A DNA stretch of 64,000 nucleotides, taken from Macrostomum hystrix (taxonomy: Eukaryota; Animalia; Platyhelminthes). The stretch is from assembly GCA_950097015.1 (NCBI GenBank), contig CATNEN010000039.1, forward strand, positions 3,224,001-3,288,000, in the 5' to 3' direction. The notes beneath the pieces were generated by a model, which was given only the letters and a program-made list of their open reading frames with translations, ran no database searches and had not been told where the DNA came from. Both the position numbers and the translations under genes were made by a program. This document shows, piece after piece, positions 6,377 through 63,538 of the stretch (its first letter is position 1; every line of letters begins with the position of its first letter).

Positions 6377-6462
6377 TTAGTCAACGAATCGGGAGTTCAG
6401 CTCTTCAACTTTAGTTTGGAGTCTCTTTTTCAAGCCAGCAATCGAGTTTTTGGCAGCAATGG
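6377..6462 (-). CDS. Exon 17: probable terminal exon, short charged tail
   Basis: ATTTCAG|CC in phase 1; (A)IAAKNSIAGLKKRLQTKVEELNSRFVD*; AT-rich sequence follows. No PLAC domain found. Confidence 0.5.
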
Positions 6463-9400
6463 CTGAAATTTGGCATTGACTGACTGTAGAAAATGTTTTT
6501 GTTGCAATTAATATATGCGCACTAACACCACTCACAATCTCAAAATCTCATCATCACCCACCTCATCAATCACTCACATTATCATCAACCAATTCATCAG
6601 TCACCCACCTAATCAGTCACCCACCTAATCAATTACCCATCTCATCAATCATCCTCTCGTCTACTCCACCTCTCGTCAATCACCAACCTCACTAATCAAC
6701 CATCTCATAAATCTATCACACTGCTCATCAATCACCCACCTCATTAATCACTCACCTTATCAATCACCCACCTCATCAATCACCCTCCTCATCAATCACC
6801 CACCTAATAAATCAACCTCCTTATCAATCACCCACCTCATCAATCACCCACCTCACCAGCCCCCTCCTCATCGACAGCAGATTTCAAAGCTTTTGTTTAA
6901 TACTTATTTCCTGGAAATTGACGCTCACCCTCAAGGCAGCGGATGCGGAAATCGCTGCAGTCGCTGCTGGCGCTGGGGCAGACTGGTTTGCAAATCCGGT
7001 CAGTTGGACAAGCCCGGCTGTCCGAGCACGGAGACACGCAGCTGCAGGTCAGGCAGCCTGCCGAGTCGCGCTTGTAGCCGAAGCGACACTTCTGCTGGCA
7101 GCGGGTCGGCTGGCACTCTGCCAAACAATTCGAGGCTATTGTTTAGCCGTGTGGTAACCACGTCGGCTATCATTGTTGACTATTTTTAATTGATTAAATT
7201 GTTAATTTTTCAATTTTAAACCAATATGGATTCGCAATAGAGGTTTATAGCGTGCAATGTCACTTGTCCTTGTCACCAGGGTCTCCGACAAGAATTGCTG
7301 AATATACGAGTATCAGGTGTTAGGTGAAAGGTGTCATGTCTACCTATTGAGAAAATTGTATAGCTATTGTCGACCGACCAGAGCCAATCAGGCTTGGCTG
7401 AGCGTCACATTGACTGTGAAAAGTGCTTAACATCACAATAAAAACGAGCTGAACTCACTCGAGACCACGCTGACATTCACCCGATTCGACTCCGCCATCT
7501 CAAAGCCGTTGCCAAGGCGACAGAAATACCGTCCGGCGTCTTCGCGACGAATCGGCGACAGGCGCAAATCGCCAGGCGATGCGGCTTCAATAGGCGACTC
7601 CTGAAGTAGCGTCGGCTGCGGACGCCCGGGCACCTCCTTGTACCAAATCGTCCGGCAAGGCGCCGCTAGACCTCCGACGACCGAGCAGGTCAGCACGAGC
7701 GAGCCGCCGACCGACAACTCGAGAGACGTCTGGCCGGCGGCTGCCGCGGCCGAAGCCAGGGCGCCGGACATGGGCTCGCGGTACTGGACCAGCACCGTCC
7801 GAGAGTCCGGCCGGCCGATGCCATTGCTGGCCAGGCAGAGGTAGGTCCCGTCAACGCCGGGCTGAGCCGTCAGGTTGAGCTCGGCTCCCTGAGGATTTGT
7901 AAATTTAGCAAAAATACGGAGCTTTTGCACACCAGCCAACCGTGAGCTATTCCGACTCCTAATCCATTAGAAAAATACACATATTTGTAGCGCTGGGATT
8001 TTAAAATGGGTACCGAGGCATGCTCCCTACAGCCATCAGCCCGGCAACCCCCCCCCCACGATCGATACATGAGCACACACCTCAGTCAGCGGCCCCAGCT
8101 GCAGCCGGTCGTGCCTGAACCACTGAACCCTTGGCGACGGCTGACCGCGCGCAGCGCACTTCAACAGCGCCGTCTGATTGCGCCTGATCAGCGGCAGCTC
8201 CGAGGCTTCCAGGCCGATGATTCTCGCTGGCGACTGGACGATCAGCCTCTGGAGGACTTTGCCAACGATGCCGGAGCAACTGTAGATGCCGGAGTCGGCG
8301 AGCTCGGCCCGGGCCAGCCAGAGGCTGCCAGCAGCGTCTGCTGCGTCGCCGTCCTGGTCGTCGTTCTTCACCAGAGTGACACGGTCGTCAAGCTGAATCG
8401 GTCGCCTTTTGGATTTCAGAAGGATTATTTAAGCGTCAATACAAATGCTGTTTGCGAAAAATGAACGATATATTTTATTGTTCGATGATGGATGTAAATA
8501 CTTTAAGCGCTTCTAGAATCTTCGTCTATGATTCGAGGATAACATTCTATGATTACCAACTCTGGCGCCACTACCAGGGGGGCGCCATTACCAGCTCTGA
8601 AATGAGTTCCAACATTAGCTGGGCTGGAGACTTTGATGGGCGTGGCGGCCTGCCAGTCCATCGGCTTAGCGGCTGTAGACAGTCCTTAGATGCGCTAACT
8701 GGGAATAAATCGACCAAATACCTTACTATTACATTTAACTTAAGGTAACAACACGACGACTCCAAAAAACTAAACTAAAGAATTTGAAAAACCAGCTGCG
8801 CTTCCGTGAAGGGGGCTAGTTTGCTAGTCTATATTTACAGACTCGTAGTTTTAAAACTGCGCAGTGACCCACCCGTTCTTTTCCCAGGTGACCGCCGCGG
8901 CTGAAGCTGTCTTTGCTCCGCTGCCCGATCCACGACAGGCCAGACGAACTGGATCGCCTTCTAGAGCAACAACTGAAGTCGTGACGCCGTCTTGAACCTT
9001 GGCACTGCTAGCTAAGGATCGAGGTGCACCTGTTGGCTCAGTGCAAATGGTGTGGACAATTACATCATCCTGTGACGTTGTTGCCATGAAGGCGCAGCAT
9101 TTTTGGGCGCCGGGACACTCCAGATCCTGACTGCAGCGAACGCTGCTGCTGCTGTTGCTGCTACTTTTGACCCCGCGATTAAATTGCATTGTTGGGCAGC
9201 TACCTAGCTTGACAACTGAAACATCAATGTTATGTTAGAAGTCAAGGCGAGTGTGTGCGAGCTACGAAACGCTTAAAGCCAGCGATGGGCAGAGAGCCGA
9301 TATATATATTATTGTTTAGTCAAGTGCAGTGATCAATGTACATTGTACGCGTCAATGGGGGACTGGGGGGCAGGTGCACTGAGAGAGAAAGAGAAAGACT

Positions 9401-12400
9401 GCACGTCGGCTAGCCAGCATCGATCATTACACAACAATCAAGACAATGCATATAACAATAAGAATACGATGATTTGTACGGCCCACTCGCACCACACGAT
9501 ACCCATGAGCACACTAACCAGGCTCGCAGGTGACTGTCGAATTCTCGCATTCGAAGTCAACGCATTTCGCACTGCACCGTTCAAGCGGTCCGCAGCCGCC
9601 GACACCGGCGCACGGATCATGACACCGGCAGATGCGGCAACCGTCTGCGCGGGTGAATTGGCGATGACGGCCGAACGGACAGTCAGACGGGCACACGCTC
9701 AGCTGTGCGTTGCATTCTGGATCAAAGCGGGGAAACCCAAATCAATTGGTATCATCTGATTGGCATTGATTTTGAGCAGGGGTCAGCAAACTCCAGACCG
9801 CCAGATGCCACCCGTTGCCCCTTAGGACACCTACAGTTATCCTGTTTTATCCGTGTCGCATCTCTACCGTGTCTCTTCTCTCCCATTCTACAGTGAATGC
9901 GACCCGCTATCGTCTTTTGGACTCTCTCCTTGACCCGCTAGCTACCCGCTAAGTGTGCCGACCCTTGATTTAGAGTTTCACCTGTAATAGATATTCAACA
10001 GTTAACCCAGTCTGATACTGATGCCATTTCTTTTGGATATTGAACCTCTGCTCACCTCTGCTCTCCACTGGACAAAGGTTCTCGCAATCGCTGCGAGTCA
10101 AGAACGCATTCCCTTTAAGCGATGAGTTGGCGCAGGCTGTTACATCTGACTCGCTCTCGCACCGTTTACTGGTCGCATTGAAGCTGAAGACCTTGCGCTG
10201 TAGCTCTACTGGGCAGAGAGCCATCGCCGGTACTTTAGCCTGATCCAATCGCTCTTTACTGTGGCACTCTTCACGTTCCCTAGGTACCGCGTCAGCTATG
10301 GGATCATTGATGGATCGCTTTGCGCGCTGAATAGAAGCAACATTCGAGCGTCTAATCAGTCGCGAACCCGACATGCACCTGGCCTGGCACTCCAGGTGGC
10401 TGCCGAACCTGTTCGGACTGCCGCCGCAGCCGTTGTAAACGAATTCGCTGCACTGGCCAGTGTCGAAGTTGTAGTAGTAGCGCAACGCCTGGGCCAGAAG
10501 GGGGTTCGCACCGCCACACAGGCGGCCCTGCGAGGCCGGGTGCAGGCACGGGTTCTTCATCAGCGGCGTCTCGCAGATGCTGCGACACTCAGCCAGGCTC
10601 AGGAATCGGTTCCGGTTGCCAAGGCAACCGCCGTACCGCATCTCCCGACAGCTGCCGGTCTCCGGATTGTAGGCGAAGCGCATCAGCGACTCTCCACACG
10701 GTCCGGGGTCGGCATCCAGGAAGCAGACGCGCTGCCGCAGCTCTGGGTAGCAGTGCCGCTTGCAGTCCCTCCAAGTGGTGAAGAAATTGCCCTGACGATT
10801 TGCCACTCCGCGTGACAGCGACTCGCGACAGGTGACGTCGCGAGCATCGTAGTGATACCTGATGTACGTAGGTGAAGTCTGCGTTGATTCTAGAGAAGGC
10901 AGCGTCGGAGGCAGCTGACATCGGTCTTGGAGCATGTCAATCGTCGCTGACTGGCCGGCGCACAGAACTCGGCGGTTCTCGCAGTCGTTGCGGCTTGCGA
11001 AAAACTGTTGGGAGCGTTGAGCCGCGCAGGCTGCTGGTACTGACACCTCTTCACATTCAGCTACGCCACCGTCTAACCGTCTATCGCCGAGTTGCCAACG
11101 AGTCAGCAGCTGAGGGTCTTGGATGCTCTCAGCGCAGGGCGACGGCTTCGTGCAGGACGGTTGCGATGCTCCTGTTTTGTGAGACATCGATGGATATATT
11201 TGCAGGATTGTTGCTGAAGCAAAGTGACTTTAACGTAACCGAGGCTCTGCTGCCATTTCGCTGCAGGACAGCGTGATACGAAGTAGCTTTTGTCCCTAAC
11301 AAATTGACAGTAAAACTTCTCAATCCAACTTTTCTCACCGAAATTCAGGCACGCATAGTAGCAGTCCTCCTCAGTCTCAAAGTTGTTCGCGTTGCCGCCA
11401 CAGCCGGTGTACTTGAACTTTCGGCACCGACCGATGTTGGCGTCGAAGAAGTAGCGCGTCAGTCGGACAACGTCGGACATCGCGCACGAGCCGGTAGATG
11501 GTGGCAGGTGGCACAAACCGCTGCTTGCGTTGGACGCTGGAGTGATCAGCGGAGCTGGTCCACCGATCCACCTACTAGTGTTCCGCCTGTGGCTTAACTC
11601 CAACGCTGTCGAGCCCGATGCTGGCAGTCGACGAGCATTCGCGTGGCCATCCCCTGCGCTACCGCACGTTCGCTCGCAGTCGACCGCATTGAGGAATCGA
11701 TTTCGGTTGCCTTGACAACCACCGTAGACGAATTCCCGGCAGGAGCGTCGGTTTGAATCGTAAAAATAGCGGCTATGCGTCTCTGCACAGGGACCCTCGT
11801 CCATGGGAAGGCTGCACACGTCTACAGTTCGACATGTAGCGATTGCAAATTGGTTCGCAAATAACTCAATTGCTTGGTTAGACAGAAACCCAGACCAGAC
11901 ACCCACCCCAGACCAGACACCCGAGGTTGTCTAGTGTCCAGTGGCTAGCGAAATTGGCGGCTTCCGCCGCCTCCTCGCTGCATGCGCTCGGGCCCTGCAA
12001 ATTAGTCAGATAAGTCAAGACCAGACACCCACCCCACACCCGACACCCTCCCCTGACCAGACACCCACCCCAGACCCGACACCCTCCCCTGACCAGACAC
12101 CCACCCCAGACCCGACACCCTCCCCTGACCAGACACCCACCCCAGGCCACTGATTGGGCGGTGGCTGAAGACATCAGAGTCCAAGACACTCACCGGCCAG
12201 CGAGCTGGGCATGCAGTGCTGCCGGCACTCGTCTAGCGTACCGAAGCTGTTGCCAGCCAGCGAGTCGTTGGGGCACACAGTCCGCCGGATGCACGCCCTC
12301 TGCTGGTCGCTATAGAAGTACATGTCGTGAGGTGACTCGCAGTGAGTAACGTCTGAATTGATCTCGAACGAAGCGAAGCAGCGATCTAAAAGAAGATAAA

Positions 12401-15400
12401 AAATTCCACTGTTAGAGGGAATTGATTTTCAATGCATTTTGCATAGTTTTATGTATTCTCTGCATGCTTATTCATCCAGGTGTAAATCAAAAGTCTTTCA
12501 CACCCTGCACAACGCTGTCCGTGGCCTGTTTCACGCAGGCCACGCCACAGGCGCCCCTGTCAGCGAAGAACTCCTGCTCAGCGAGGCTCCGGCAGGCGGT
12601 TGTGTTCTTGACCATCGCAGGCAGGCAGGCGCCAGTGCTGGCCGAGTAGCGATAGCGCAGGTCGCCGCCATCTGGCGACTGCGCGGCCGTGAAGTCCAGA
12701 CAGGCGAGTGCGGAGCTCGGCATGGCGCACCGGGAGCTGAGGTCGTCTAATGAATAAGCGTTCAGGTGTTCATTTTATCAGGCATTGGCGTAGCCAGGAT
12801 TTTTGTCTAGTGGGCCGTCTTTTGGGGGCGCCACTACCAGGGGGGCGCCACTACCAGGGGGCGCCACTACCAGGGGGGCGCCACTACCAGGGGGGCGCCA
12901 CTACCAGGGGGCGCCACTACCAGGGGGGCGCCACTACCAGGGGGCGCCACTACCAGGGGGGCGCCACTACCAGGGGGGCGCCATTACCAGTGGGGGCCAA
13001 TGCCAATACTAGGAGCCGGGGTGCCACCACCACGGGGCGTCCTTACTTACTTTTCAGGGGGGCCTGGGGCACCTGACGCACAGACACAGGAACGGCATGC
13101 CCCCAGGCCGGCGAACTAGGCGAAAGCCGCCCATCGCGCCGCCTCCCCTGAGCAGGCACCTCACACACACACAGCAGCAAGCCAAGCGGGGAAGGGGGCG
13201 GCAGCCGGAGTGCCTCTCACCCCAGGCCCGCACACGCACAGAGCAGACCAAGCCGGGGCGGAAGGCTGATAGAAATCAGTCCTCAGGGGGGGCCTGGTGG
13301 CGAGTGTACACTTTATCCAATCGCGCTGACGGAAATCCAGATGAGCACGCCGCGGTGTACACCCGCCCCCCAGCCACCCCCCCGCAAGGTCTAACGCACC
13401 AGCGCCAACGCACATAACTCATACAACGCAGAACAGGCACACAGAAGGTAGGAGCGAAGCTATTTTTCAAGCTTTGATTGCACGAAATATGGTGCACCTC
13501 CGCCGGTCGCTACTGTCCAAACCCCCCCAACAAGTACCGAAATTAATCGTGACTTGAAGGGTGAATCGAACTAGCGTCCTTTGGAGTGCGAGGCAGCGAC
13601 GTTAGCCGCTGACCCCACTCGCCCCTTAAACCACGGGGCGTCCGTATCAGGGGGCGCCGCTACTCGGACTACTCATCCAGATGATCACAGTGCATGTTCT
13701 CACGCTGAAATCGCCTAAGGCAGCTGGCCTCGCACATGGCGAGGGTGTCGAATCGATTCGCCGAACCGTTGTCCAACAGTGAGTACTCGTAAGCGGCGCA
13801 GAGGCCATTGTTTGGCACGTAGCCGAAGGCCGATCGAGAGCTCGGGCTAGACAGCATCGGCGATGTCGGCACACCGTTGAAGCCGCCGGTCTCTTGACGG
13901 CACGGTTCATAGTCTGGGTATGTGTACCGGACACAACGTTTATCATGTACGCGTGACAACTGACAAACATGCGTGCCCGGAACATACTAACCCGTACTCT
14001 TGAAGAATTTCTCTCAACTATAAACTTTCGACGCTAGACACTAGACCCGCAGCCAGCGACGACCTCATTTCACTGACTCCTGAGCACGCACGCACACAGA
14101 TACCGTACGCAGGCATGCGCTCACACAGGGTGTCTACATCTTCCCTGACTTTCTCATCGTCAGGGCCGAGGTTGGCCCTCGGGCATAAATTGCACAAGCC
14201 CCCAAGCCTTCTCTCCGCGGCTGGGCCCCAAATGAATGTGGCCTCGCCGCGGAGTCAAACTTCGAGACCTTGGCGCAAACGCGCAAACGCGCAAACCAAC
14301 AGAACTTCTGCTACAGAACGTCGAAAATTCAAGAGATTAAAAGCATTGATTTCATTTGCTCTTGATTTTTTATTAATGAAATTCAGTTTTCGCTAAATGA
14401 GTTGCCAATGACCGTCATGTATGAACATACGCATTTTGTACGCACCTAACAGTCTCGACACATCTTGCGACCTGCGCACCCGGATGGTCGGCTGGCAACT
14501 GACCTTACGCCAGGCCACGACATTGTTTAGACCCCGGCAGAAGCTCATCGACACCGGCTGGTCGCCCAGTTGACACGTTGGTGTCAAAATCCTGTAATTC
14601 CCGGCGCTGCAGTTGTCATGCTGCCATGTCACGGTGTAGTTCTTGTTCACTGGGTCGCAATGCTCTTTGTAAACACAGCTGCGCAACAGTTCTTTAGACT
14701 GCTCAACAGTGAGCTGCTCAATGCAGGTTCTCAAAGGCAGAGGGTCTCTGTACGCATCCACACACCACACCTCTCTGGTCATGTAGCTCTCCTGGGTCAT
14801 GTGGTCGCACACGCACTGTAAAAAGTTTGTGTTAATTAACAAGTCTTTGAGAATGCGCAATAATTTACGCTGACGATAAGAAAGTGTCAATGGAATTGGC
14901 AGATGTCAGTCAGTCGCGACGGATTTCGGTGCCCATAGTACCACTGTGAACATTATTGCAGTCATTTGTTTTTGGACTCAGACAAGATTTACCTCTCATT
15001 ACCTCTCTCTCAATGCGTTAAAAGTCATGAATATTAAAGCAATGTAATCTGACGTCACTCTATTGACAAAGCCTCATATATATTATTGTGTTGCAAAATA
15101 ACGAAATTCGCAATATTAGCACTACTCACCTCAGACCATGGAGAAAAATCCAGGCCCGAAAACTGTTTAGTGTCGTTAAATACCAGGTACGGGTAATCCG
15201 TTCCCTCAACACCAGCATGAGCTCGAACTGAAGTTGCCGAACAGAAAGATAAGGCATATCAAAACAGCAGAAAGACAGACCCGCTAATTCCAACTGATCA
15301 CTTACGTCCGATTTCACGCACGTCCTGGAATTTTCAAATAAAGGAAAACTATGAACAATGTGCATATATCCCAGTAGGAAGTTGAAATTGGAAATAAGAA

Positions 15401-51400: not shown

Positions 51401-54400
51401 TGTCTCGCCCGTAGCAGCAGTCGAAGCTGCATTGGATGGCGATTCAATCTCGATGCTTGGTGCCACGGAAGGAGAAGAGCTCTCGGTCGAAGCCGACACC
51501 GTACTCGTCGCAGTCGCTTCCGAAGTGCTTACAGGTGGCGTCTCGACTCCCGCTGCGCTTGAGGCTTCTGGCTTGCTCGTTGCTGCAGTCGAAGCTGCAC
51601 TGGATGGCGATTCAGTCTCGATGCTTGGTGTCGAAGCGGTAGAAGAGGTCACGGTGGAGGCCGACTCCGTACTTGTCGCAGTCGCTTCCGAAGTGCCTAC
51701 CGTCCGCGTCTCGACTCTCGCTGTACTTGTGGCTTCTGGCTCGCCCGTTGCAGCAGTCGAAATTGCAATAGATGGCGATTCAGTCTCGATGCTTGGTGTC
51801 TTGGAAGAAGAAGAGCTCTCGGTCGAAGCCGACACCGTACTCGTCGCAGTCGCTTCCGAAGTGCTTTCAGATGACGTCTCGACTCTCGCTGCGCTTGAGG
51901 CTTCTGGCTCGCCCGTAGCAGCAGTGGAAGCTGCACTGGATGGCGATTCGGTCTCGATGCTTGGTGTCACGGAAGCAGAAGAGCTCTCGGTCGAAGCCGT
52001 CACCGTACTCGTCGCAGTCGCTTCCGAAGTGCCTACTGTCCGCGTCTCGTCTCTCGCTGTGATTGTGGCTTCTGGCGCGCTCGTTGCTGCAGTCGAAGCT
52101 GCACGGGATGGCAATTCAGTCTCGATGCTTGGTGTCGAAGCGGCAGAAGAGGTCACGGTGGAGGCCGACTCCGTACTTGTCGCAGTCGCTTCCGAAGTGC
52201 CTACGGTCCGCGTCTCGACTCTCGCTGTGATTGTGGCTTCTGGCTCGCTCGTTGCTGCAGTCGAAGCTGCACTGGATGGCAATTCAGTCTCGATGCTTGG
52301 TTTCGAAGCGGTAGAAAAGGTCACGGTGTAGGCCGACTCCGTACTTGTCGCAGTCGCTTCCGAAGTGCCTTTGGTCCGCGTCTCGACTCTTGCTGTACTT
52401 GTGGCTTCTGGCTCGCCCAATGCAGCAGTCGAAATTGCTATAGATGACGATTTAGTCTCGATGCTTGGTGTCTTGGAAGAAGAAGAGCTCTCGGTCGAAG
52501 CCGACACTGTACTCGTCGCAGTCGCTTCCGAAGTGCCTACTGTCCGCGTCTCGACTCTCGCTGTGCTTGTGGCTTCTGGCTCGCTCGTGGCTGCAGTCGA
52601 AGCTGCAGTGGATGGCATTTCAGTCTTGATGCTTGGTGTCGAAGCGGAAGAAGAGGTCACGGTGGAGGCCGACTCCGAACTTGTCGCAATCGCTTCCGAA
52701 GTGCTTTCAGTCGGTGTCTCGACTCTCGCTGTGCTTGTGGCTTCTGGCTCGCTCGTGGCTGCAGTCGAAGCTGCACTGGATGGCAATTCAGTCTCGATGA
52801 TTGGTGTCGAAGCGGCAGAAGAGGTCACGGTGGAGGCCGACTCCGTACTTGTCGCAGTCGCTTCCGAAGTGCTTACAGTCGGCGCCTCGACTCTCGCTGT
52901 ACTTGAGGCTTCTGGCTCACCTGTTGCAGCAGTCGAAATTGTAATAGATGGCGATTCAGTCTCAATGCTTGGTGTCACGGAAGCAGAAGAACTCTCGGTC
53001 GAAGACGACACTGTACTCGTCACAGTCGCTTCCGAAGTGCTTACAGGTAGCGTCTCGACTCCCGCTGCGCTTGAGGCTTCTGGCTCGCTCGTTCCTGCTG
53101 TCGAAGCTGCACTGGATTGCGATTCAGTCTCGATGCTTGGTGTCGAAGAGGCAGAAGAGGTCACGGTGGAGGCCGACTCCGTACTTGTCGCACTCGCTTC
53201 CGAAGTGCCTACTGTTCGCGTCTCAACTCTCGCTGTACTTGAGGCTTCTGGCTCGCCCGTTGCAGCAGTCGAAGCTGCACTGGATGGCGATTCAGTCTCG
53301 ATGCTTGGTGTCACGGAAGCAGAAGAGCTCTCGGTCGAAGCCGACACCGTACTCGTCGCAGTCGCTTCCGAAGTGCCTGCCGTCCGCGTCTCGACTCTCG
53401 CTGTGATTGTGGCTTCTGGCGCGCTCGTTGCTGCAAGCGAAGCAGCACTGGATGGCGATTCAGTCTCGATGCTAGGTGTTACGTAAGAAGAAGAGCTCTC
53501 GGTCGAAGCCGACACCGTGCTTGTCACAGTCGCTTCCGAAGTGCTTACGGTCGGCGTCTCGACTCTCGCTGTACTTGTGGCTTCTGTCTCGCCCGTAGCA
53601 GCAGTCGAAGCTGCATTGGATGGCGATTCAATCTCGATGCTTGGTGCCACGGAAGTAGAAGAGCTCTCGGTCGAAGCCGACACCGTACTCGTCGCAGTCG
53701 CTTCCGAAGTGCCTACTGTCCGCGTCTCGTCTCTCGCTGTGATTGTGGCTTCTGGCGCGCTCGTTGCTGCAGTCGAAGCTGCACGGGATGGCAATTCAGT
53801 CTCGATGCTTGGTGTCAAAGCGGAAAACAAGGTCACGGTGGAGGCCGACTCCGAACTTGTCGCACTCGCTTCCGAAGTGCCTACGGTCCGCGTCTCGACT
53901 CTCGCTGTACTTGTGGCTTCTGGCGCGCTCGTTGCTGCAGTCGAAGCTGCACTGGATGGCAATTCAGTCTCGATGCTTGGTGTCGAAGCGGAAAAAGAGG
54001 TCACGGTGGAGGCCGACTCCGTACTCGTCGCACTCGCTTCCGAAGTGCCTACTGTCTTCGTCTTGACTCTCGCTGTGATTGTGGCTTCTGGCGCGCTCGT
54101 TGCTGCAGTCGAAGCTGCACTGGATGGCAATTCAGTCTCGATGCTTGGTGTCTTGGAAGAAGAAGAGCTCTCGGTCGAAGCCGACACCGTACTCGTCGCA
54201 GTCGCTTCCGAAGTGCTTACAGATGACGTCTCCACTCTCGCTGCGCTTGAGGCTTCTGGCTCGCCCGTAGCAGCAGTCGAAGCTGCACTGGATGGCGATT
54301 CAGTCTCGATGCTTGGTGTCACGGAAGCAGAAGAGGTCACGGTGGAGGCCGACTCCGTACTTGTCGCACTCGCTTCCGAAGTGCCTACTGTTCGCGTCTC

Positions 54401-57400
54401 GACTCTCGCTGTGATTGTGGCTTCTGGCGCGCTCGTTGCTGCAGTCGAAGCTGCACGGGATGGCAATTCAGTCTCGATGCTTGGTGTCGAAGCGGCAGAA
54501 GAGGTCACGGTGGAGGCCGACTCCGTACTTGTCGCAGTCGCTTCCGAAGTGCCTACGGTCCGCATCTCGACTCTGGCTGTACTTAAGGCTTCTGGCTCGC
54601 CCGTAGTAGCAGTCGAAATTGCAATAGATGGCGATTCAGTCTCGATGCTTGGTGTCACGGAAGCAGATGAGCTCTCGGTCGAAGCCGACACCGTACTCGT
54701 CGCAGTCGCTTCTGAAGTGCTTACAGATGACGTCTCGACTCTTGCTGCGCTTGAGGCTTCTGGCTCGCCCGTAGCAGCAGTCGAAGCTGCACTGGATGGC
54801 GATTCAGTCTCGATGCTTGGTGTCACGGAAGCAGAAGAGGTCACGGTGGAGGCCGACTCCGTACTAGTCGCACTCGCTTCCGAAGTGCTTACAGATGACG
54901 TCTTGACTCTTGCTGCGCTTGAGGCTTCTGGCTCGCCCGTAGCAGCAGTCGAAGCTGCACTGGATGGCGATTCAGTCTCGATGCTTGGTGTCACGGAAGC
55001 AGAAGAGGTCACGGTGGAGGCCGACTCCGTACTTGTCGCACTCGCTTCCGAAGTGCTTACAGATGACGTCTCGACTCTCGCTGCGCTTGAGGCTTCTGGC
55101 TCGCCCGTAGCAGCAGTCGAAGCTGCACTGGATGGCGATTCGGTCTCGATGCTTGGTGTCACGGAAGCAGAAGAGCTCTCGGTCGAAGCCGACACCGTAC
55201 TCGTCGCAGTCGCTTCCGAAGTGCTTACAGATGACGTCTCGACTCTCGCTGCGCTTGAGGCTTCTGGCTCGCCCGTAGCAGCAGTCGAAGCTGCACTGGA
55301 TGGCGATTCGGTCTCGATGCTTGGTGTCACGGAAGCAGAAGAGCTCTCGGTCGAAGCCGACACCGTACTCGTCGCAGTCGCTTCCGAAGTGCCTACTGTC
55401 TGCGTCTTGACTCTCGCTGTGATTGTGGCTTCTGGCTCGCCCGTAGCAGCAGTCGAAGCTGCACTGGATGGCGATTCAGTCTCGATGCTTGGTGTCGAAG
55501 CGGTAGAAGAGGTCACGGTGGAGGCCGACTCCGTACTTGTCGCAGTCGCTTCCGAAGTGCCTACCGTCCGCGTCTCGACTCTCGCTGTACTTGTGGCTTC
55601 TGGCTCGCCCGTTGCAGCAGTCGAAATTGCAATAGATGGCGATTCAGTCTCGATGCTTGGTGTCTTGGAAGAAGAAGAGCTCTCGGTCGAAGCCGACACC
55701 GTACTCGTCGCAGTCGCTTCCGAAGTGCTTACAGATGACGTCTCGACTCTCGCTGCGCTTGAGGCTTCTGGCTCGCCCGTAGCAGCAGTGGAAGCTGCAC
55801 TGGATGGCGATTCGGTCTCGATGCTTGGTGTCACGGAAGCAGAAGAGCTCTCGGTCGAAGCCGACACCGTACTCGTCGCAGTCGCTTCCGAAGTGCTTAC
55901 AGATGACGTCTCGACTCTCGCTGCGCTTGAGGCTTCTGGCTCGCCCGTAGCAGCAGTCGAAGCTGCACTGGATGGCGATTCATTCTCGATGCTTGGTGTC
56001 GAAGCGGAAAAAGAGGTCACGGTGGAGGCCGACTCCGTACTTGTCGCAGTCGCTTCCGAAGTGCCTACGGTCCGCATCTCGACTCTCGCTGTACTTGAGG
56101 CTTCTGGCTCGCCCGTAGCAGCAGTCGAAGCTGCACTGGATGGCGATTCAGTCTCGATGCTTGGTGTCACGGAAGCAGAAGAGGTCACGGTGGAGGCCGA
56201 CTCCGTACTTGTCGCAGTCGCTTCCGAAGTGCCTATGGTCCGCGTCTCGACTCTTGCTGTACTTGTGGCTTCTGGCTCGCCCGTTGCAGCAGTCGAAATT
56301 GCTATAGATGACGATTCAGTCTCGATGCTTGGTGTCTTGGAAGAAGAAGAGCTCTCGGTCGAAGCCGACACCGTACTCGTCGCAGTCGCTTCCGAAGTGC
56401 CTACTGTCCGCGTCTCGACTCTCGCTGTGCTTGAGGCTTCTGGCTCGCTCGTGGCTGCAGTCGAAGCTGCAGTGGATGGCATTTCAGTCTTGATGCTTGG
56501 TGTCGAAGCGGAAGAAGAGGTCACGGTGGAGGCCGACTCCGAACTTGTCGCAATCGCTTCCGAAGTGCTTTCAGTCGGTGTCTCGACTCTCGCTGTGCTT
56601 GTGGCTTCTGGCTCGCTCGTGGCTGCAGTCGAAGCTGCACTGGATGGCAATTCAGTCTCGATGATTGGTGTCGAAGCGGCAGAAGAGGTCACGGTGGAGG
56701 CCGACTCCGTACTTGTCGCAGTCGCTTCCGAAGTGCCTGCCATCCGCGTCTCGTCTGTCGCTGTGCTTGTGGTTTTTGGCTTGCCCGTTGCTGCAATCGA
56801 AGCAGCACTGGATGGCGATTCAGTCTCGATGCTAGGTGTTACGTAAGAAGAAGAGCTCTCGGTCGAAGCCGACACCGTACTCGTCGCAGTCGCTTCCGAA
56901 GTGCTTAAGGTCGGCGTCTCGACTCTCGCTGTGCTTGAGTCTTCTGGCTCGCTCGTTTTTGCTGTCGAAGCTGCACTGGATTGCGATTCAGTCTCGATGC
57001 TTGGTGTCTTGGAAGAAGAAGAGCTCTCGGTCGAAGCCGACACCGTACTCGTCGCAGTCGCTTCCGAAGTGCCTACTGTCCGCGTCTCGACTCTCGCTGT
57101 GCTTGAGGCTTCTGGCTCGCTCGTGGCTGCAGTCGAAGCTGCAGTGGATGGCATTTCAGTCTTGATGCTTGGTGTCGAAGCGGAAGAAGAGGTCACGGTG
57201 GAGGCCGACTCCGAACTTGTCGCAATCGCTTCCGAAGTGCTTTCAGTCGGTGTCTCGACTCTCGCTGTGCTTGTGGCTTGTGGCGCGCTCGTTGTTGCAG
57301 TTGAAGCTGCACTGGATGGCGATTTGGTCTCGATGCTTGGTGTCACGGAAGCGGAAGAGCTCTCGGTCGGAGCAGACACAGTACTCGTCGCAGTCGCTTC

Positions 57401-60400
57401 CGAAGTGCTTACAGATGGCGTCTCGACTCTCGCTGCGCTTGAGGCTTCTGGCTCGCTCGTTGCTGCAGTCGAAGCTGCACTGGATGACGATTCAGTCTCT
57501 AAGCTTTGTGTCGCACCGACCGTTGATTCTGTAGGAGCAGGTGACTCATGTGTTGATTTCGCTGACGTTTTAAGTTTACTTGCATTCAGTGTTGTGTCAT
57601 CCAGAACTTGGCTAGGCTTCGTCTCCTTTGTTTTTGTATATACTTCAGTCTCAATGGCAGCAGCAGTAGTACTAATATCAACTGATGGAAAACTAGTATG
57701 CAACGCCGTTGCTGTCCCCATATCAACGGTTGATGGCGCGTCGGCAGTGGAGCCCTCTGTCGAAGCCGACTCCGTTCTCGTCGCAGTAGCTTTCGAAGAG
57801 CTTACAGTCGGCGTCTCGATTTTCGCTGTGCTTGTGGTTTCTTGTTTGCGCGTTGCTGCAGTCGAAGTTCCACTGAATGGCATTTCAGTCCCGATGCTTG
57901 GTGTCGAAGCGGAAGAAGAGGTCACGGTGGAGGCCGACTCCGTACTTGTCGCAGTCGCTTCCGAAGTGCCTGCCGTCCGCGTCTCGACTCTCGCTGTGCT
58001 TGTGGCTTCTGGCTCGCTCGTGGCTGCAGTCGAAGCTGCAGTGGATGGCATTTCAGTCTCGATGCTTGGTGTCGAAGCGGAAGAAGAGGTCACGGTGGAG
58101 GCCGACTCCGAACTTGTCGCAATCGCTTCCGAAGTGCCTACTGTCGGATTCTCGACTCTCGCTGTGCTTGAGGCTTCTGGCTCGCTCGTGGCTGCAGTCG
58201 AAGCTGCAGTGGATGGCAATTCAGTCTCGATGCTTGGTGTCGAAGCGGTAGAAGAGGTCACGGTGTAGGCCGACTCCGTACTTGTCGCAGTCGCTTCCGA
58301 AGTGCCTATGGTCCGCGTCTCGACTCTTGCTGTACTTGTGGCTTCTGGCTCGCCCGTTGCAGCAGTCGAAATTGCTATAGATGACGATTCAGTCTCGATG
58401 CTTGGTGTCTTGGAAGAAGAAGAGCTCTCGGTCGAAGCCGACACCGTACTCGTCGTAGTCGCTTCCGAAGTGCCTACCGTCCGCGTCTCGACTCTCGCTG
58501 TGCTTGAGGCTTCTGGCTCGCTCGTGGCTGCAGTCGAAGCTGCAGTGGATGGCATTTCAGTCTCGATGCTTGGTGTCGAAGCGGCAGAAGAGGTCACGGT
58601 GGAGGCCGACTCCGAACTTGTCGCAATCGCTTCCGAAGTGCTTTCAGTCGGTGTCTCGACTCTCGCTGTGCTTGTGGCTTCTGGCTCGCTCGTGGCTGCA
58701 GTCGAAGCTGCACTGGATGGCAATTCAGTCTCGATGATTGGTGTCGAAGCGGAAGAAGAGGTCACGGTGGAGGCCGACTCCGAACTTGTCGCAATCGCTT
58801 CCGAAGTGCCTACTGTCGGATTCTCGACTCTCGCTGTGCTTGAGGCTTCTGGCTCGCTCGTGGCTGCAGTCGAAGCTGCAGTGGATGGCATTTCAGTCTC
58901 GATGCTTGACGTTTCTGTTATTTTTGAATTGGTTGTTTCGGTTTTGCTCTGTTTGCTTAGGGTTTCTGTTGTCCTGCTTTTTCCTGCTTCGAATAATTCC
59001 CAGGTGTCATTGTGGCATGCTGTGCAGCAGTCGATTAGTTTGTTGAAAGCGTTTAGGTGCTGCAGAAAATGAATAAAGAACTCTTTGCTTCCGTTTTTTG
59101 GTTCCTTGAGATGCTGAGTGGCATTCAGTCCTTTGGTTTTGCACTCCACGCAGCAGTGTTTTAGGATTATGTCGAATGTGTTTTGGAATCCGGCTGAAAA
59201 ATCAGTTGTTAGGATTTTGTAGTGAGTTTGAGGTTATATTTGAATAATGCTCTGGCATGATTTTTGTAGCATTATTTTCTTTTTACGGCTTGGCAAAAAG
59301 GAGTGTTGTTTTTTGCTTTAAACTGCCAAATTGAGCTTTTATCTTCAGCTTCTGTCACGGAGAAATGACATATCGCTTGTTCCAGACAACTTGACCTCGG
59401 TTGAGGGACGGTCTGCCTTTGCTATCTTCTGGGTTGGCTGAATTCAGGGCAAGCAGGTTCGGATTTGAAGCCAGTGGTGACCAGTGCCATGTGCACTTCC
59501 GGCCAGTCACTCGTTGGACCCCAGGTCCTACAGCTGCTTCTGCAGGTGCTAATTATCTGACATTCATTTTCAGCCCTAAATATCTTTATGACTTTCAACT
59601 TTGACATTGAGGTGCAGATTGGCAGCAGTAAAGCGTGTATTACGTTAGCATACGAGGGTCTCTCAGAATGTCTTTTGCCTGAGTATGATCCACGATTCGC
59701 TTTTGACTAGGATTTTAAATAGGATTTTGATTGTGGAAAAATAAATTATTTTTGAATGTTTATTTTTTCAGATAAATATAATAAATTCTTTTTTCCAAAT
59801 AATTAAAATATAACAATAGATACTTATGTAAAACATATCTAACAAAAGTATGATCCACGAGGAAATTTTTCTATGCATCAACTATCTACTGAAAACAGCC
59901 TCACAGTGAAATTTTCAAATACAAGTATAAGTAGCCAACCTTGAGCAGTTTTTATGGGTTTTTAGTTGTTACGAGCGTACGTTGCTGTTTCCATACTTGG
60001 GGTGACACTTTCAGCAACACAATCTGCTGCGATTCCAGCAACACATTCTGCTGCGATTCCAGCAACACATTCTGCTGCGATTCCAGCAACACATTCTGCT
60101 GCGATTCCAGCAACACATTCTGCTGCGATTCCAGCAACACATTCTGCTGCGATTCCAGCAACACATTCTGCTGCGATTCCAGCAACACAATCTGCTGCGA
60201 TTCCAGCAACACATTCTGCTGCGATTCCAGCAACACATTCTGCTGCGATTCCAGCCACACAATCTGCTGCGATTCCAGCAACACATTCTGCTGCGATTCC
60301 AGCAACACATTCTGCTGCGATTCCAGCAACACATTCTGCTGCGATTCCAGCAACACAATCTGCTGCGATTCCAGCAACACATTCTGCTGCGATTCCAGCC

Positions 60401-60969
60401 ACACAATCTGCTGCGATTCCAGCAACACATTCTGCTGCGATTCCAGCAACACATTCTGCTGCGATTCCAGCCACACAATCTGCTGCGGATCTAGCCACAA
60501 ATTCTGCTGCGATTCTTGCCAAAAAATCTGCTGCGATTCCAGCACACATTCTGCTGCGATTCCAGCCACACAATCTGCTGCGATTCCAGCCACACATTCT
60601 GTTGCGATTCCAGCCACACATTCTGCTGCGATTCCAGCACACATTCTGCTGCGATTCCAGCCACACAATCTGCTGCGGCAGGCACACATTCTACTACGGT
60701 TCCAGCCACATGCTACGATTCTTATAGTGGATTCCGCTGCGTTTCTCATAGTGGATTCAGCTAAGGTTCTAAACTCTGATTCTGGATTTTATTAAATAAA
60801 TCGGGGAAATTTAAATGCTTTCAGCAAAAAATATCGTTGAGTTTGATCAGTCCAACAGAAACTTACTAGTCGCTTTCGGCTGCTGAGCAATGACAGTTCC
60901 AGCCATAGACAGCAGCAGCAGCAGCAGCAATGTCGCGAACCCGGCAAGTACCAGCCGAGCTGTAGACAT
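6377..60969 (-). CDS. Giant secreted mucin / papilin-like extracellular matrix protein (whole gene model, 17 coding exons, about 16,000 aa)
   Basis: Minus-strand exons 60969-60867, 59193-15589, 15489-15434, 15324-15306, 15227-15130, 14815-14446, 13913-13704, 12746-12504, 12385-12194, 11821-11339, 11213-10056, 9716-9519, 9215-8873, 8405-8081, 7888-7459, 7135-6929, 6462-6377. All have GT-AG boundaries, matching intron phases and one continuous frame. The order TSP1-Kunitz(n)-WAP-Ig(3) matches the C-terminal half of invertebrate papilin/lacunin/MIG-6. Confidence 0.75.
6527..6870. repeat. Degenerate ~16-bp C/A-rich intronic repeat
   Basis: Variants of CATCAATCACCCACCT fill most of the last intron. 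Confidence 0.85.
6929..7135 (-). CDS. Exon 16: second antistasin-like Cys-rich domain
   Basis: CAATAG|CC; ECQPTRCQQKCRFGYKRDSAGCLTCSCVSPC...; donor G|GTGAGC. Confidence 0.85.
7459..7888 (-). CDS. Exon 15: end of Ig domain 2 and Ig domain 3
   Basis: CCTCAG|GGA; DGTYLCLASNGIG, GGSLVLTCSV...IWYK...DLRLSPIRREDAGRYFC; donor A|GTGAGT. Confidence 0.9.
8081..8405 (-). CDS. Exon 14: end of Ig domain 1 and start of Ig domain 2
   Basis: AAAAG|G CGA CCG (phase 2); GSLWLARAELADSGIYSC and TALLKCAARGQPSPRVQWFR; donor GAG|GTGTGT. Confidence 0.88.
8873..9215 (-). CDS. Exon 13: WAP domain (6 Cys) and start of Ig domain 1
   Basis: GTTTCAG|TT; KLGSCP...CSQDLECPGAQKCC...CTEP then ALEGDPVRLACRGSG...VTWEKNG; donor GG|GTGGGT in phase 2. 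Confidence 0.85.
9519..9716 (-). CDS. Exon 12: antistasin-like Cys-rich domain
   Basis: GATCCAG|AA...CCT G|GTTAGT; ECNAQLSVCPSDCPFGRHRQFTRADGCRICRCHDPC... fits C-C-xxx-CPFG...DGCxxCxC. Confidence 0.85.
10056..11213 (-). CDS. Exon 11: five Kunitz or Kunitz-like domains (2 canonical, 3 divergent)
   Basis: ORF 9970..11187 contains CFLDADPGPCGESLMRFAYNPETGSCREMRYGGCLGNRNRFLSLAECRSIC and CLHP...RYYYNFDTGQCSEFVYNGCGGSPNRFGSHLECQARC. Donor G|GTGAGC. The acceptor is at 11213, or alternatively at 11171 (same phase). Confidence 0.9.
11339..11821 (-). CDS. Exon 10: two canonical BPTI/Kunitz domains
   Basis: CSLPMDEGPCAETHSRYFYDSNRRSCREFVYGGCQGNRNRFLNAVDCERTC and CHLPPSTGSC...RYFFDANIGRCRKFKYTGCGGNANNFETEEDCYYAC; TGTAG|AC and G|GTGAGA. 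Confidence 0.92.
12019..12146. repeat. 36-bp intronic tandem repeat, about 3.5 copies, with related fragments at 11885-11925
   Basis: Unit ACCAGACACCCACCCCAGACCCGACACCCTCCCCTG. Confidence 0.9.
12194..12385 (-). CDS. Exon 9: divergent Kunitz-like domain 3 (absent from the ORF track)
   Basis: CTTTTAG|AT...GCC G|GTGAGT; DRCFASFEINSDVTHCESPHDMYFYSDQQRACIRRTVCPNDSLAGNSFGTLDECRQHC. Confidence 0.8.
12504..12746 (-). CDS. Exon 8: divergent Kunitz-like domain 2
   Basis: CATTAG|AC...CAG G|GTGTGA; RCAMP...AC...RYRYSASTGAC...AC...FFADRGACGVAC. Confidence 0.75.
12823..12996. repeat. 16-17-bp G-run minisatellite, about 10 copies; a 2-copy relative lies at 8563-8593
   Basis: G(5-7)CGCCACTACCA in tandem; both loci end in the variant GGCGCCATTACCAG. 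Confidence 0.92.
13704..13913 (-). CDS. Exon 7: Kunitz-like domain 1 (4 Cys)
   Basis: CCCAG|AC...CAG C|GTGAGA, phase 1-1; PC...FGYVPNNGLCAAYEY...GSANRFDTLAMCEASC. Confidence 0.75.
14446..14815 (-). CDS. Exon 6: ADAMTS/papilin-type TSP1-like modules (2, divergent)
   Basis: TTTTTACAG|TGC. The spliced sequence SPWSE-CVCDHMTQESYMTREVWCVDAYRDPLPLRTC...RSC fits WSxC...TRxVxC...C...C; the second module is WQHDNCSAGNYRILTPTC...FC...SC. Donor G|GTGCGT was chosen; alternative donors exist at 14504 and 14509. Confidence 0.75.
15130..15227 (-). CDS. Exon 5: linker and start of the TSP1-like module
   Basis: ACTTCAG|TT CGA...TGG TCT GAG|GTGAGT; (L)RAHAGVEGTDYPYLVFNDTKQFSGLDFSPWSE. It supplies the WS motif that joins the Cys at the start of the next exon. 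Confidence 0.75.
15306..15324 (-). CDS. Exon 4: 19-nt microexon
   Basis: AATTCCAG|GACGTGCGTGAAATCGGAC|GTAAGT; DVREIG; phase 0 to 1. It is needed to keep the frame between exons 3 and 5. Confidence 0.6.
15434..15489 (-). CDS. Exon 3: linker
   Basis: TTGCAG|CT TCG...TCT GGG|GTAAGT; (A)SPLLFSTPFPPMRGIDSG; phase 1 to 0. Confidence 0.65.
15589..59193 (-). CDS. Exon 2: 43,605-bp exon encoding the CCxxC-containing N-terminal segment and the Ser/Thr-rich mucin-like tandem repeat domain
   Basis: Contains the uninterrupted 14,526-aa ORF 15569..59149. The frame stays open upstream to acceptor TTTTTCAG|CC GGA TTC at 59193 (phase 1). Putative donor ACG G|GTTCGT at 15589. The ORF-track GTG start is not the real start. 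Confidence 0.9.
15755..58907 (-). repeat. Coding 168-bp (56-aa) tandem repeat, about 255 copies, with 153-bp and 156-bp variants
   Basis: Consensus approx. TPSIETESPSSAASTAATGEPEATSTARVETRTVGTSEATATSTVSASTESSSASV. The observed length variants are in-frame (15-bp and 12-bp deletions). Confidence 0.98.
60012..60712. repeat. 24-bp minisatellite in intron 1 of the giant gene, about 29 copies
   Basis: Unit CAGCAACACATTCTGCTGCGATTC, degenerating toward 60700. Confidence 0.97.
60867..60969 (-). CDS. Exon 1: signal peptide (absent from the ORF track)
   Basis: gccATG then MSTARLVLAGFATLLLLLLLSMAGTVIA|QQPKAT: basic n-region, poly-Leu h-region and a V-I-A cleavage motif. It ends at a consensus donor A|GTAAGT in phase 1, matching the giant exon acceptor. 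Confidence 0.85.
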
Positions 60970-63280: not shown

Positions 63281-63538
63281 TTTTGTAGACCAGGAATTCT
63301 TTAGATAGCGCAAAGGCCACGAACTACGTACAAAGGAAATTCGATATATTTATACTAACAAATTATGACTAGAGGTGACAATGGCACGTGGAGAGCAAGG
63401 AGTAAGAACAGAGCACCTTGTGTCGCACGCGCAGGTGACACACCCGGCCCACGCACGCATAGGAAGAATGGACGTGCATTGCGCAACGACAAGTTAATAG
63501 AGTACATTCAAGTCCGGTTGAATATTCAAGTCACAACA
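63281..63538. mobile_element. Probable solo LTR or short inserted element, 258 bp
   Basis: Unique sequence interrupting the satellite, flanked by direct CTTAG at 63276-63280 and 63539-63543. Termini TTTTGT...ACAACA are one mismatch from the inverted pair TGTTGT...ACAACA. TATA-like TATAAATA on the minus strand near 63350. Confidence 0.65.

What the first reader, a model, noticed from the sequence alone, without database searches (positions are those of the whole stretch)
6377..60969. A ~16,000-aa secreted mucin-papilin chimera encoded by one complete gene
Seen: the 14.5k-aa ORF is not standalone. A signal-peptide exon (60969-60867) splices in phase onto it, and a chain of phase-matched exons links it to TSP1-like x2, Kunitz x~10, antistasin, WAP, Ig x3 and antistasin modules. 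Known: invertebrate papilins (Drosophila Ppn, C. elegans MIG-6, Manduca lacunin) have an N-terminal TSP1/ADAMTS-spacer cassette, a Ser/Thr-rich region, Kunitz repeats, Ig domains and a C-terminal PLAC domain. Here the cassette is replaced by a mucin making up about 90% of the chain, the TSP1-like modules follow the Ser/Thr region, antistasin modules are present and PLAC is not seen. Inference: a lineage-specific ~1.5-MDa apoprotein acting as a mucus, glue, cocoon or matrix scaffold with a protease-inhibitor-like or adhesive head. Automatic annotation would probably split or miss it.
Basis: partly seen in the sequence, partly recalled or inferred. Interest (0 to 1): 0.92.

Follow-up and report, generated by a model that had tools for sequence, protein, structure and literature searches.

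The report
Giant flatworm mucin with papilin-like tail
A Macrostomum-type flatworm gene encodes one secreted protein of about 16,000 residues: nine-tenths acidic mucin-like repeats, then a tail of protease-inhibitor-like and immunoglobulin domains. It is a lineage-specific variant of known matrix and mucus proteins, and its role is untested.

Summary
On the minus strand, a signal-peptide exon (60969-60867), one 43.6-kb exon (59193-15589) and 14-15 further exons form one open frame of 16,003-16,021 aa. The big exon has no stop in 14,534 codons and holds about 257 copies of a 56-aa Ser/Thr/Ala/Glu unit.

Four of the remaining five junctions are colinear with the M. lignano orthologue.

Pfam confirms Kunitz (7 of about 10 modules), WAP, three Ig and antistasin. 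The 'TSP1-like' module failed every test and is an orphan 10-Cys module.

The design is conserved. Two partial M. lignano models carry the same repeat fused to the same tail. A paralogue on another contig joins a 1,104-aa Thr/Glu mucin exon to the same kind of tail.

Papilins are the nearest outside relatives (25-30% identity). Cassette, TSRs and PLAC are absent, so it is papilin-like, not a papilin.

Three exactly identical 7-9 kb blocks make the repeat number, and so the length, uncertain. The function (a secreted polyanionic mucus or matrix scaffold with a binding or inhibitor-like head) is inferred only.

Verdict: new variant of a known kind, moderate interest.

The parts
60867..60969 (-). 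Exon 1: start codon and signal peptide (28-aa leader, cleavage guessed after VIA), ends in phase 1
   Evidence: Sequence: GTAAGT donor. No RNA check.
15589..59193 (-). Exon 2, 43,605 nt. About 95 aa of unique N-terminal region with two CCxxC motifs, then about 257 units of 56 aa (consensus IETESPSSAASTAATGEPEASSTARVETPTVSTSEATATSTVSASTESSSASVTPS), then about 75 aa of non-repeat end. S+T 48%, Pro 5%, no Cys, pI 4.1.
   Evidence: The 3' end (15589-15862) lies in spliced contigs.
21685..50721 (-). Three exactly identical higher-order blocks inside the repeat: 21685-30619 = 31525-40459; 33549-40459 = 42885-49795; 23709-31545 = 42885-50721
   Evidence: Either very recent duplication or an assembly artefact.
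15434..15489 (-). Exon 3 (56 nt), linker
   Evidence: Junction 15589|15489 in contigs of X2, X3, X4. The donor is read from the sequence, and the 173-nt sum fits the contigs.
15306..15324 (-). Exon 4 (19 nt), linker
   Evidence: length sum 56+19+98 = 173 nt in contig records.
15130..15227 (-). Exon 5 (98 nt), ends ...DFSPWSE
   Evidence: Junction 15130|14815 in three runs.
14446..14815 (-). 47% identical to M. lignano, single copy in the genome, absent from the paralogue.
13704..13913 (-). Exon 7: degenerate Kunitz module 1
   Evidence: Pfam 3.7e-5; junctions.
12504..12746 (-). Exon 8: Kunitz-like module 2 (by cysteine spacing only)
   Evidence: junctions, also in run X1. No Pfam hit.
12194..12385 (-). 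Exon 9: Kunitz-like module 3
   Evidence: Pfam 0.0043, below cut-off; junctions.
11339..11821 (-). Exon 10: two canonical Kunitz domains (P1 Ala, Ala)
   Evidence: Pfam 4e-37, 2 stretches.
10056..11171 (-). Exon 11: five Kunitz-type modules, two of them canonical (P1 Gly, Gly)
   Evidence: Pfam 6e-36, 3 stretches. Continuous contig cover, with contigs ending at 10056 and running on elsewhere.
9519..9716 (-). Exon 12 (predicted): antistasin-like module 1
   Evidence: Splice sites and phase; Pfam 0.035; similar to module 2, E 6e-4; colinear with P0001.
8873..9215 (-). Exon 13 (predicted): WAP domain plus first half of Ig1. The WAP part is missing from the M. lignano models, so an inner acceptor near 9029 is possible.
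   Evidence: Pfam WAP 2e-7. The paralogue has WAP and the Ig start in one ORF.
8081..8405 (-). Exon 14 (predicted): second half of Ig1, first half of Ig2
   Evidence: Pfam Ig_3/I-set; phases; colinear with P0001.
7459..7888 (-). Exon 15 (predicted): second half of Ig2, and Ig3
   Evidence: Pfam Ig_3 2e-9.
6897..7117 (-). Exon 16 (predicted): antistasin domain. Either read on to the stop at 6899-6897 (16,003 aa) or spliced after 6929.
   Evidence: Pfam Antistasin 1.5e-6.
6377..6462 (-).
   Evidence: Only weak likeness to the P0001 C-terminus; not found in the paralogue. Unresolved.

Best explanation
This is one real, transcribed gene of a Macrostomum-type flatworm. It encodes a secreted giant glycoprotein of about 16,000 aa as assembled (1.57 MDa, pI 4.2).

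Anatomy, in order:
- a signal peptide;
- a short N-terminal region with two CCxxC motifs;
- about 14,400 aa of acidic Ser/Thr/Ala/Glu 56-aa repeats with no cysteine;
- a disulfide-rich tail of about 1,400 aa.

The tail holds an orphan 10-Cys module, about 10 Kunitz-type modules, an antistasin-like module, WAP, three Ig domains and an antistasin domain. Four of the Kunitz modules are canonical, with P1 residues Ala, Ala, Gly, Gly.

Shown here: the gene structure, its transcription and splicing into the tail, the domain content, and conservation of the design in M. lignano and in a paralogue.

Inferred: the repeat is densely O-glycosylated and forms a micrometre-long polyanionic bottle-brush that holds water and keeps surfaces apart. 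The tail is the working head. It ties the brush to matrix or cell-surface partners through its Ig and Kunitz-like modules and may shield the secretion from proteases. The non-basic P1 residues argue against classical trypsin-type inhibition.

I judge an apical or external secretion (surface mucus, gland product) somewhat more likely than an internal basement-membrane role, because of the size and the lack of the papilin cassette.
For: - Open frame: 0 stops in 14,534 codons, against 24-488 in the other frames.
- Spliced, mismatch-free contigs bridge 15862..15589|15489...14815 (X2 record 11), on to 13704 (X3 record 17) and on to 11536 (X2 record 10). All junctions are GT..AG. A second study (X1) shows 12504|12385.
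- All 16 exons are in frame.
- Domains by Pfam.
- The signal peptide and its phase-1 splice are read from the sequence.
- M. lignano P0001 is 57% identical over 1,437 aa of the tail. P0009 and P0010 carry about 1,600 and 700 aa of the homologous repeat fused to the tail.
- The paralogue on C33 joins a 1,104-aa Thr47%/Glu21% exon directly to the same tail order.
- Composition: S+T 48%, net charge about -1,200, no Cys in the repeat.
- P1 residues are read from the modules.
Against:
- Nothing shows that a single transcript spans the whole 43.6-kb exon.
- Three exactly identical 7-9 kb blocks may inflate the length.
- Proline is low (5%) for a classical PTS mucin, and glycosylation cannot be tested here.
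- Variation among units is not concentrated at third codon positions (0.095/0.090/0.106), so only the frame and the composition look constrained.
- No tissue, proteomic or knock-down data were found.
Confidence: 0.7

Rival explanations
1. The gene is real but its size is inflated. The three exactly identical 7-9 kb blocks are an assembler's over-expansion, and the true protein is nearer 9,600 aa. Alternatively the array is collapsed and the protein is even longer.
For: Exact identity over 8,935, 7,837 and 6,911 bp at offsets 9,840, 19,176 and 9,336, while neighbouring 168-bp units differ by about 20%.
Against: Very recent unequal crossing-over or gene conversion gives the same picture in real mucin arrays. 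The flanks of the blocks grade from 0.8 to 1.0 identity rather than ending abruptly. The frame stays open through all the block borders.
Confidence: 0.25
2. It is the flatworm's true papilin: a basement-membrane protein that regulates matrix proteases and matrix assembly, whose Ser/Thr-rich region has simply grown very large.
For: Papilins are the best non-Macrostomum matches of the orthologue. A nematode papilin finds this gene and its paralogue as its best matches in the genome. The Kunitz array followed by three Ig domains is the papilin order. No other gene with Kunitz plus TSRs was seen.
Against: No papilin cassette, no recognisable TSR and no PLAC in the gene. ADAMTS_spacer1 and PLAC gave nothing in the genome. 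Papilin's known inhibition of an ADAMTS enzyme is attributed to the cassette (my own knowledge). Antistasin and WAP are not papilin parts. The similarity rests mostly on repeated Kunitz domains.
Confidence: 0.2
3. There are two transcription units. The mucin exon and the Kunitz/Ig tail are mostly expressed apart, through an internal promoter or polyadenylation, and the joined form is a minor read-through.
For: The M. lignano model P0001 starts at a Met in the exon-3 equivalent. No read evidence covers the 5' 43 kb.
Against: All three runs of one study show the canonical, in-frame splice 15589|15489. No contig was seen to start a tail transcript at exon 3. P0001 has no signal peptide although it is a cysteine-rich extracellular protein, so it looks truncated. 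P0009, P0010 and the paralogue show the same fusion.
Confidence: 0.05

Closest known systems
Papilin (Drosophila Ppn, C. elegans MIG-6, Manduca lacunin, vertebrate PAPLN)
   Same: Secreted. Has a Ser/Thr-rich stretch, a tandem Kunitz array followed by three Ig domains, and exons of phase 1. Papilins are the best outside matches (25-30% identity, E to 1e-86). UniProt's automatic name for the M. lignano orthologue is 'Papilin'.
   Different: No TSR/ADAMTS Cys-rich/spacer cassette, no recognisable TSRs and no PLAC. Antistasin x2 and WAP are added. The Ser/Thr region is about 14,400 aa and precedes everything else.
Macrostomum lignano adhesion protein Mlig-ap2 (14,794 aa; PMC6410801)
   Same: Same genus, similar giant size, a long central repeat that carries O-glycans, and cysteine-rich ends.
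   Different: Per the paper, ap2 has vWD, TIL and LDL domains at the N-terminus, 221-255-aa repeats and C-terminal TSP1 repeats. Here there are 56-aa acidic repeats and a Kunitz/WAP/Ig/antistasin tail. No sequence relation was seen.
Mixed-type compound protease inhibitors of matrix (e.g. Bombyx BmSPI56 with Kunitz/antistasin/WAP, BmSPI57 lacunin with Kunitz x4 + WAP; PMC3278429), and WFIKKN (WAP-Kazal-Ig-Kunitz-Kunitz-NTR; own knowledge)
   Same: Kunitz, antistasin, WAP and Ig modules on one secreted chain.
   Different: Those are a few hundred to about 2,000 aa with no mucin domain. Here the canonical Kunitz P1 residues are Ala or Gly, not Lys or Arg.
Giant non-gel-forming mucins and apical-matrix giants (MUC16, Drosophila Dumpy; own knowledge)
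   Same: More than 14,000 aa, a Ser/Thr-rich tandem array in very large exons, and a small globular end.
   Different: No SEA, ZP, EGF or transmembrane parts. Low proline and strongly acidic.
Paralogue in the same genome, G000:C33:4616809-4625601 (minus strand)
   Same: A mucin exon spliced to the Kunitz-1 exon, then the same order: Kunitz array, antistasin, WAP, Ig x3, antistasin. 30-48% identity.
   Different: Its mucin part is only 1,104 aa and is Thr/Glu/Pro-rich with an unrelated 8-aa-type unit. It lacks exons 3-6 (the orphan module) and has a GCCPDG module after WAP.

Membership tests
Papilin | N-terminal papilin cassette (TSR + ADAMTS cysteine-rich + spacer) | tested here: not met
   No Pfam hit in the N-terminal region or in exons 3-6. 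ADAMTS_spacer1 gave no candidate in the whole genome (sensitivity of that search is unproven). Nematode papilin residues 1-350 found nothing.
Papilin | Thrombospondin type 1 repeats | tested here: not met
   Exon 6: no Pfam hit even at E<=10, no PDB sequence hit, hhalign against 11 TSRs of this genome gave probability 2.8%, and the AlphaFold model was unusable at pLDDT 40. A 'WSEC' motif across exons 5/6 and the cysteine spacing are only suggestive.
Papilin | Tandem Kunitz domains | tested here: met
   Pfam Kunitz_BPTI, 7 stretches; 4 are canonical six-Cys domains.
Papilin | Ig (I-set/C2) domains after the Kunitz array | tested here: met
   Ig_3/I-set hits in exons 13-15. The same hits occur in the orthologue.
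Papilin | C-terminal PLAC domain | tested here: not met
   No hit in the C-terminal pieces. PLAC: 15 candidates in the genome, none scored.
Secreted mucin (non-gel-forming) | Signal peptide and a long tandem repeat with more than 40% Ser+Thr | tested here: met
   Leader read from the sequence. S+T 48% over 14,455 aa in 56-aa units. Proline is only 5%.
Secreted mucin (non-gel-forming) | Dense O-glycosylation of the repeat | not testable with these tools
   Needs lectin staining, mass spectrometry or a glycosylation predictor.
Gel-forming mucin (MUC2 type) | vWD/C8/TIL assemblies and a C-terminal cystine knot | tested here: not met
   None among the Pfam hits of any exon or of the orthologue.
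Functional Kunitz serine-protease inhibitor (trypsin type) | Six cysteines and a basic P1 residue after the second cysteine | tested here: not met
   The four canonical domains have P1 Ala, Ala, Gly, Gly. M. lignano has Gln, Pro, Gly, Gly. Inhibition of other proteases is not excluded.

The most novel reading that the evidence does not exclude
Macrostomid flatworms have no canonical papilin. Instead they have turned the papilin lineage into a small family of mucin-headed proteins. One member has grown to about 16,000 aa in a single 43.6-kb exon and is the largest protein of the animal. It forms a so far unknown polyanionic surface or gland secretion whose Kunitz/WAP/antistasin/Ig tail anchors or protects it.
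Probability: 0.2. Interest if true: 0.65.

Novelty: new variant of a known kind. Interest (0 to 1): 0.5.

Why it matters
- It gives a complete, evidence-backed model for a gene that public annotation of the model flatworm M. lignano holds only as truncated, misnamed pieces.
- It shows that a papilin-like Kunitz/Ig array can be coupled to rapidly evolving mucin domains. The two paralogues have unrelated repeats of 1,100 and 14,400 aa.
- It adds a candidate to the short list of giant secreted proteins (ap1, ap2) that shape adhesion, mucus and matrix in an animal where RNAi and in situ tests are routine.
- It is also a warning case for gene finders: a 43.6-kb single exon whose repeat count is uncertain.

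Tried and rejected
- TSP1 reading of exon 6: Pfam at E<=10, PDB sequence search, AlphaFold2 with a 3-row alignment (pLDDT 40), ESM Atlas (best 0.80, Sushi-type, chance level) and hhalign against a TSR profile built from this genome (probability 2.8%). None supports it.
- N-terminal CCxxC region: Pfam only noise, Atlas blank, the 5.8-billion-protein search blank, single copy in the genome.
- I tried to confirm junctions 10056|9716, 9519|9215 and 8873|8405 through transcript-derived proteins. The search was blank.
- Papers: no mention of this gene or of a mucin-papilin fusion. It is not Mlig-ap1 or Mlig-ap2.
- A conserved last exon was not found in the paralogue, and no clear AATAAA follows either candidate stop.
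- Rfam found nothing in introns 6-7.
- The joined (spliced) protein was built only inside scripts, for the frame check, composition and two local BLAST comparisons. It was not sent to any database, family or fold tool. All such searches were done exon by exon by reference, so whole-protein InterProScan or SignalP-type runs were left out.
Full report
**What is there.**
The minus strand of the window is open from 59233 to 15572, which is 14,554 codons between stops. Tandem Repeats Finder describes 15808-58908 as 257.6 copies of a 168-bp unit with 82% matches.

The translated unit has the consensus IETESPSSAASTAATGEPEASSTARVETPTVSTSEATATSTVSASTESSSASVTPS. The repeat part is 48% Ser+Thr, 17% Ala, 12% Glu and only 5% Pro. 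It has no cysteine and a pI of 4.1.

Within the exon the coding frame has no stop in 14,534 codons. The other five frames have 24 to 488 stops. With about 20% divergence and 3% indels between neighbouring units, that is hard to get without selection for the frame. Differences among units are not concentrated at third codon positions (0.095/0.090/0.106). This fits a domain selected for composition rather than for exact sequence.

**The 5' end.**
An ATG at 60969 opens MSTARLVLAGFATLLLLLLLSMAGTVIA|QQPKAT. This has the charged, hydrophobic and small-residue parts of a signal peptide.

The exon ends after 60867 at a perfect GTAAGT donor. The acceptor ttttcag|C at 59193 takes the frame into the giant ORF in phase 1.

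Intron 1 holds a 24-bp tandem array.

**The 3' end of the giant exon and the link to the tail.**
Four runs held parts of 9900-15900. Laid on 9950-15900, their contigs skip introns with CT..AC ends on the plus strand, which is GT..AG on the minus strand. They match the exons without mismatches, so they are transcripts of this species.

- One 692-nt contig (X2 record 11) runs from 15862 inside the repeat, through 173 nt that equal exons 3-5 (56+19+98 nt as read from the sequence), into 14815-14583.
- X3 record 17 goes on to 13913-13704.
- X2 record 10 links 13913 through 12746-12504 and 12385-12194 to 11821-11536.
- The junction 11339|11171 and continuous cover of 11171-10056 follow.
- A contig of a second study (X1) shows 12504|12385.

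Joined in a script, exons 1-11 give one frame without a stop. Ten of the fifteen junctions in the 16-exon model are phase 1.

**The rest of the gene.**
Below 10056 I had no reads. I predicted exons from open segments, AG/GT sites and phase:

- 9716-9519
- 9215-8873
- 8405-8081
- 7888-7459
- 7117-6897

All are canonical and in frame, giving 16,003 aa. Contigs that end at 10056 carry 68-776 further nucleotides elsewhere, so transcripts do go on.

The junction-spanning sequences of four of the five predicted junctions are colinear with the M. lignano protein P0001. The exception is the WAP part of exon 13, which the M. lignano models lack. An inner acceptor near 9029 would skip it. The paralogue described below has WAP and the Ig start in one open segment, so I keep WAP in the model but mark it unproven.

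The very end is unresolved. The M. lignano models differ at just this point, and the paralogue gave no help.

**Domains.**
Pfam, run exon by exon, gives the following.

- Kunitz_BPTI in exon 7 (3.7e-5), exon 9 (0.0043, below cut-off), exon 10 (two, 4e-37) and exon 11 (three, 6e-36).
- Three more modules have only Kunitz-like cysteine spacing, so 'about ten' is fair, with four canonical.
- WAP (2e-7).
- Ig_3/I-set over three domains that are split by introns.
- Antistasin at the end (1.5e-6), and an antistasin-like module after the Kunitz array (0.035 in Pfam; 6e-4 against the other module).

The four canonical Kunitz domains have Ala, Ala, Gly and Gly at P1. M. lignano has Gln, Pro, Gly and Gly. 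From established knowledge of BPTI-type inhibitors, a basic P1 is what makes a trypsin-type inhibitor. These modules are therefore more likely binding modules or inhibitors of other specificities.

**The 'TSP1-like' module.**
Exon 6 (123 aa, 10 Cys) follows an exon ending in ...SPWSE, and its cysteine spacing recalls a TSR. Every test failed:

- no Pfam hit even at E<=10;
- no PDB sequence hit;
- an unusable AlphaFold model at pLDDT 40;
- Atlas neighbours at chance level;
- hhalign probability 2.8% against a profile of eleven real TSRs from this genome.

The module is conserved in M. lignano (47% identity). It is single-copy in the genome and absent from the paralogue. I call it an orphan module.

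**Whose genome, and relatives.**
Earlier notes of this scan call the genome a Macrostomum that is not M. lignano. My own results agree.

Among 1.8 billion representatives, the only real match of exon 6 is M. lignano PAA80802.1 / A0A267G6C4. It is 57% identical to the tail over 1,437 aa in one alignment. That model is 1,369 aa, starts at a Met in the exon-3 equivalent and has no signal peptide. For a protein with about 100 cysteines, this marks it as truncated.

Two other M. lignano models carry about 1,600 and 700 aa of a homologous Ser/Thr/Ala/Glu repeat fused to the same tail. The shared repeat core reads EPEATSAASVETPSVS there and EPEASSTARVETPTVS here. The two models are:

- A0A1I8IMX4 (2,922 aa), named after a spurious CCHC motif;
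- an 85%-identical model of 1,867 aa.

So the fusion is conserved across species. It is already half-visible in public data, but nowhere complete or named.

**A paralogue.**
Kunitz hits in the genome fall on this gene, on two small loci and on C33:4.617-4.622 Mb. That locus is colinear with the tail from the first Kunitz exon to the last antistasin, at 30-48% identity.

Directly upstream it has a 1,104-aa open segment of 47% Thr and 21% Glu (TTTTEEP-type units). Its end...PILS|GTACGT, faces an acceptor before DFEPCRQET, the equivalent of our exon 7. It has a textbook WAP and three Ig domains.

The mucin-plus-Kunitz/Ig design is therefore a small family with unrelated, fast-changing mucin parts.

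**Relation to papilin.**
The best non-Macrostomum matches of the orthologue are papilins and Kunitz/Ig/PLAC proteins at 25-30% identity. A nematode papilin finds this gene and its paralogue first in the genome, but only with its Kunitz part. Its cassette finds nothing.

PLAC and ADAMTS_spacer1 gave no match in the genome. The sensitivity of those two searches is unproven. TSP1_ADAMTS repeats exist elsewhere (C38) but without Kunitz nearby.

The gene thus shares two of papilin's five defining parts and fails three. I file it as papilin-like. The reading that it is the lineage's remodelled papilin stays open at about 0.2.

It is not Mlig-ap1 or Mlig-ap2, whose domains differ. Chains that mix Kunitz, antistasin and WAP are known in insects.

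**Length caveat.**
Inside the repeat, three blocks are identical to the base:

- 21685-30619 = 31525-40459
- 33549-40459 = 42885-49795
- 23709-31545 = 42885-50721

Recent unequal exchange can do this, and so can an assembler. If two copies are spurious, the protein is about 9,600 aa.

The repeat occurs nowhere else among the matches scored in the genome.

**How it most likely works.**
Shown: it is secreted by its leader (from sequence), it is transcribed and spliced as one unit into the tail, and the architecture is conserved.

Inferred: the cysteine-free, acidic Ser/Thr repeat is O-glycosylated and extended. At the roughly 0.25 nm per residue usual for mucin domains (own knowledge), it would be a brush of micrometre length. 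The tail (157 kDa, 103 Cys) is the part that binds matrix or cell surfaces and may blunt proteases.

There are no polymerising vWD or cystine-knot parts, so it would act as a monomeric or end-linked spacer and lubricant, not as a gel-former.

I give about 0.7 to this general reading. Within it, I put an external or gland secretion somewhat ahead of a basement-membrane role.

**Verdict.**
The papilin label and the TSP1 modules are not. The function is open.

It is a new variant of a known kind, of moderate interest. The main reasons are the complete model, the conserved fusion and the contrast between the two paralogues.

Noticed in passing
G000:C33:4616809-4627217 (loci L004, L002), minus strand: Paralogue with the same design: a 1,104-aa Thr/Glu/Pro mucin exon, then a Kunitz array, antistasin, WAP plus a GCCPDG module, three Ig domains and antistasin. 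A possible signal-peptide exon (MSGPSCVFAFVALCVTASS) lies about 1.6 kb upstream.
   Followed up: partly
window 14037-14297 (intron 6); also 13134-13730 (intron 7): A dispersed repeat of about 260 bp with more than 2,000 candidate copies in the genome (75-86% identity). It explains the 100-2,600-fold word depth of RNA contigs there. No Rfam family matches.
   Followed up: partly
window 1-1628; 62380-63282; 63545-64000: Satellite arrays flank the gene: a 38-bp unit x43 (96% matches), and 23-bp units x39 and x20.
   Followed up: no
window 60012-60677; 12019-12145; 12824-12997; 6547-6855: Short tandem arrays (24, 36, 17 and 16 bp) inside introns 1, 9 and 7, and in the last intron or 3' UTR.
   Followed up: no
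G000:C38:18155596-18160148 (L013), plus strand: A gene with at least ten ADAMTS-type thrombospondin repeats and no Kunitz domain nearby. It is the closest thing in the genome to the TSR part of papilin or ADAMTSL.
   Followed up: partly
M. lignano models P0001, P0009, P0010 versus window 9215-9030: The WAP stretch present here and in the paralogue is missing from all three M. lignano models. This could be loss, exon skipping or annotation error.
   Followed up: partly
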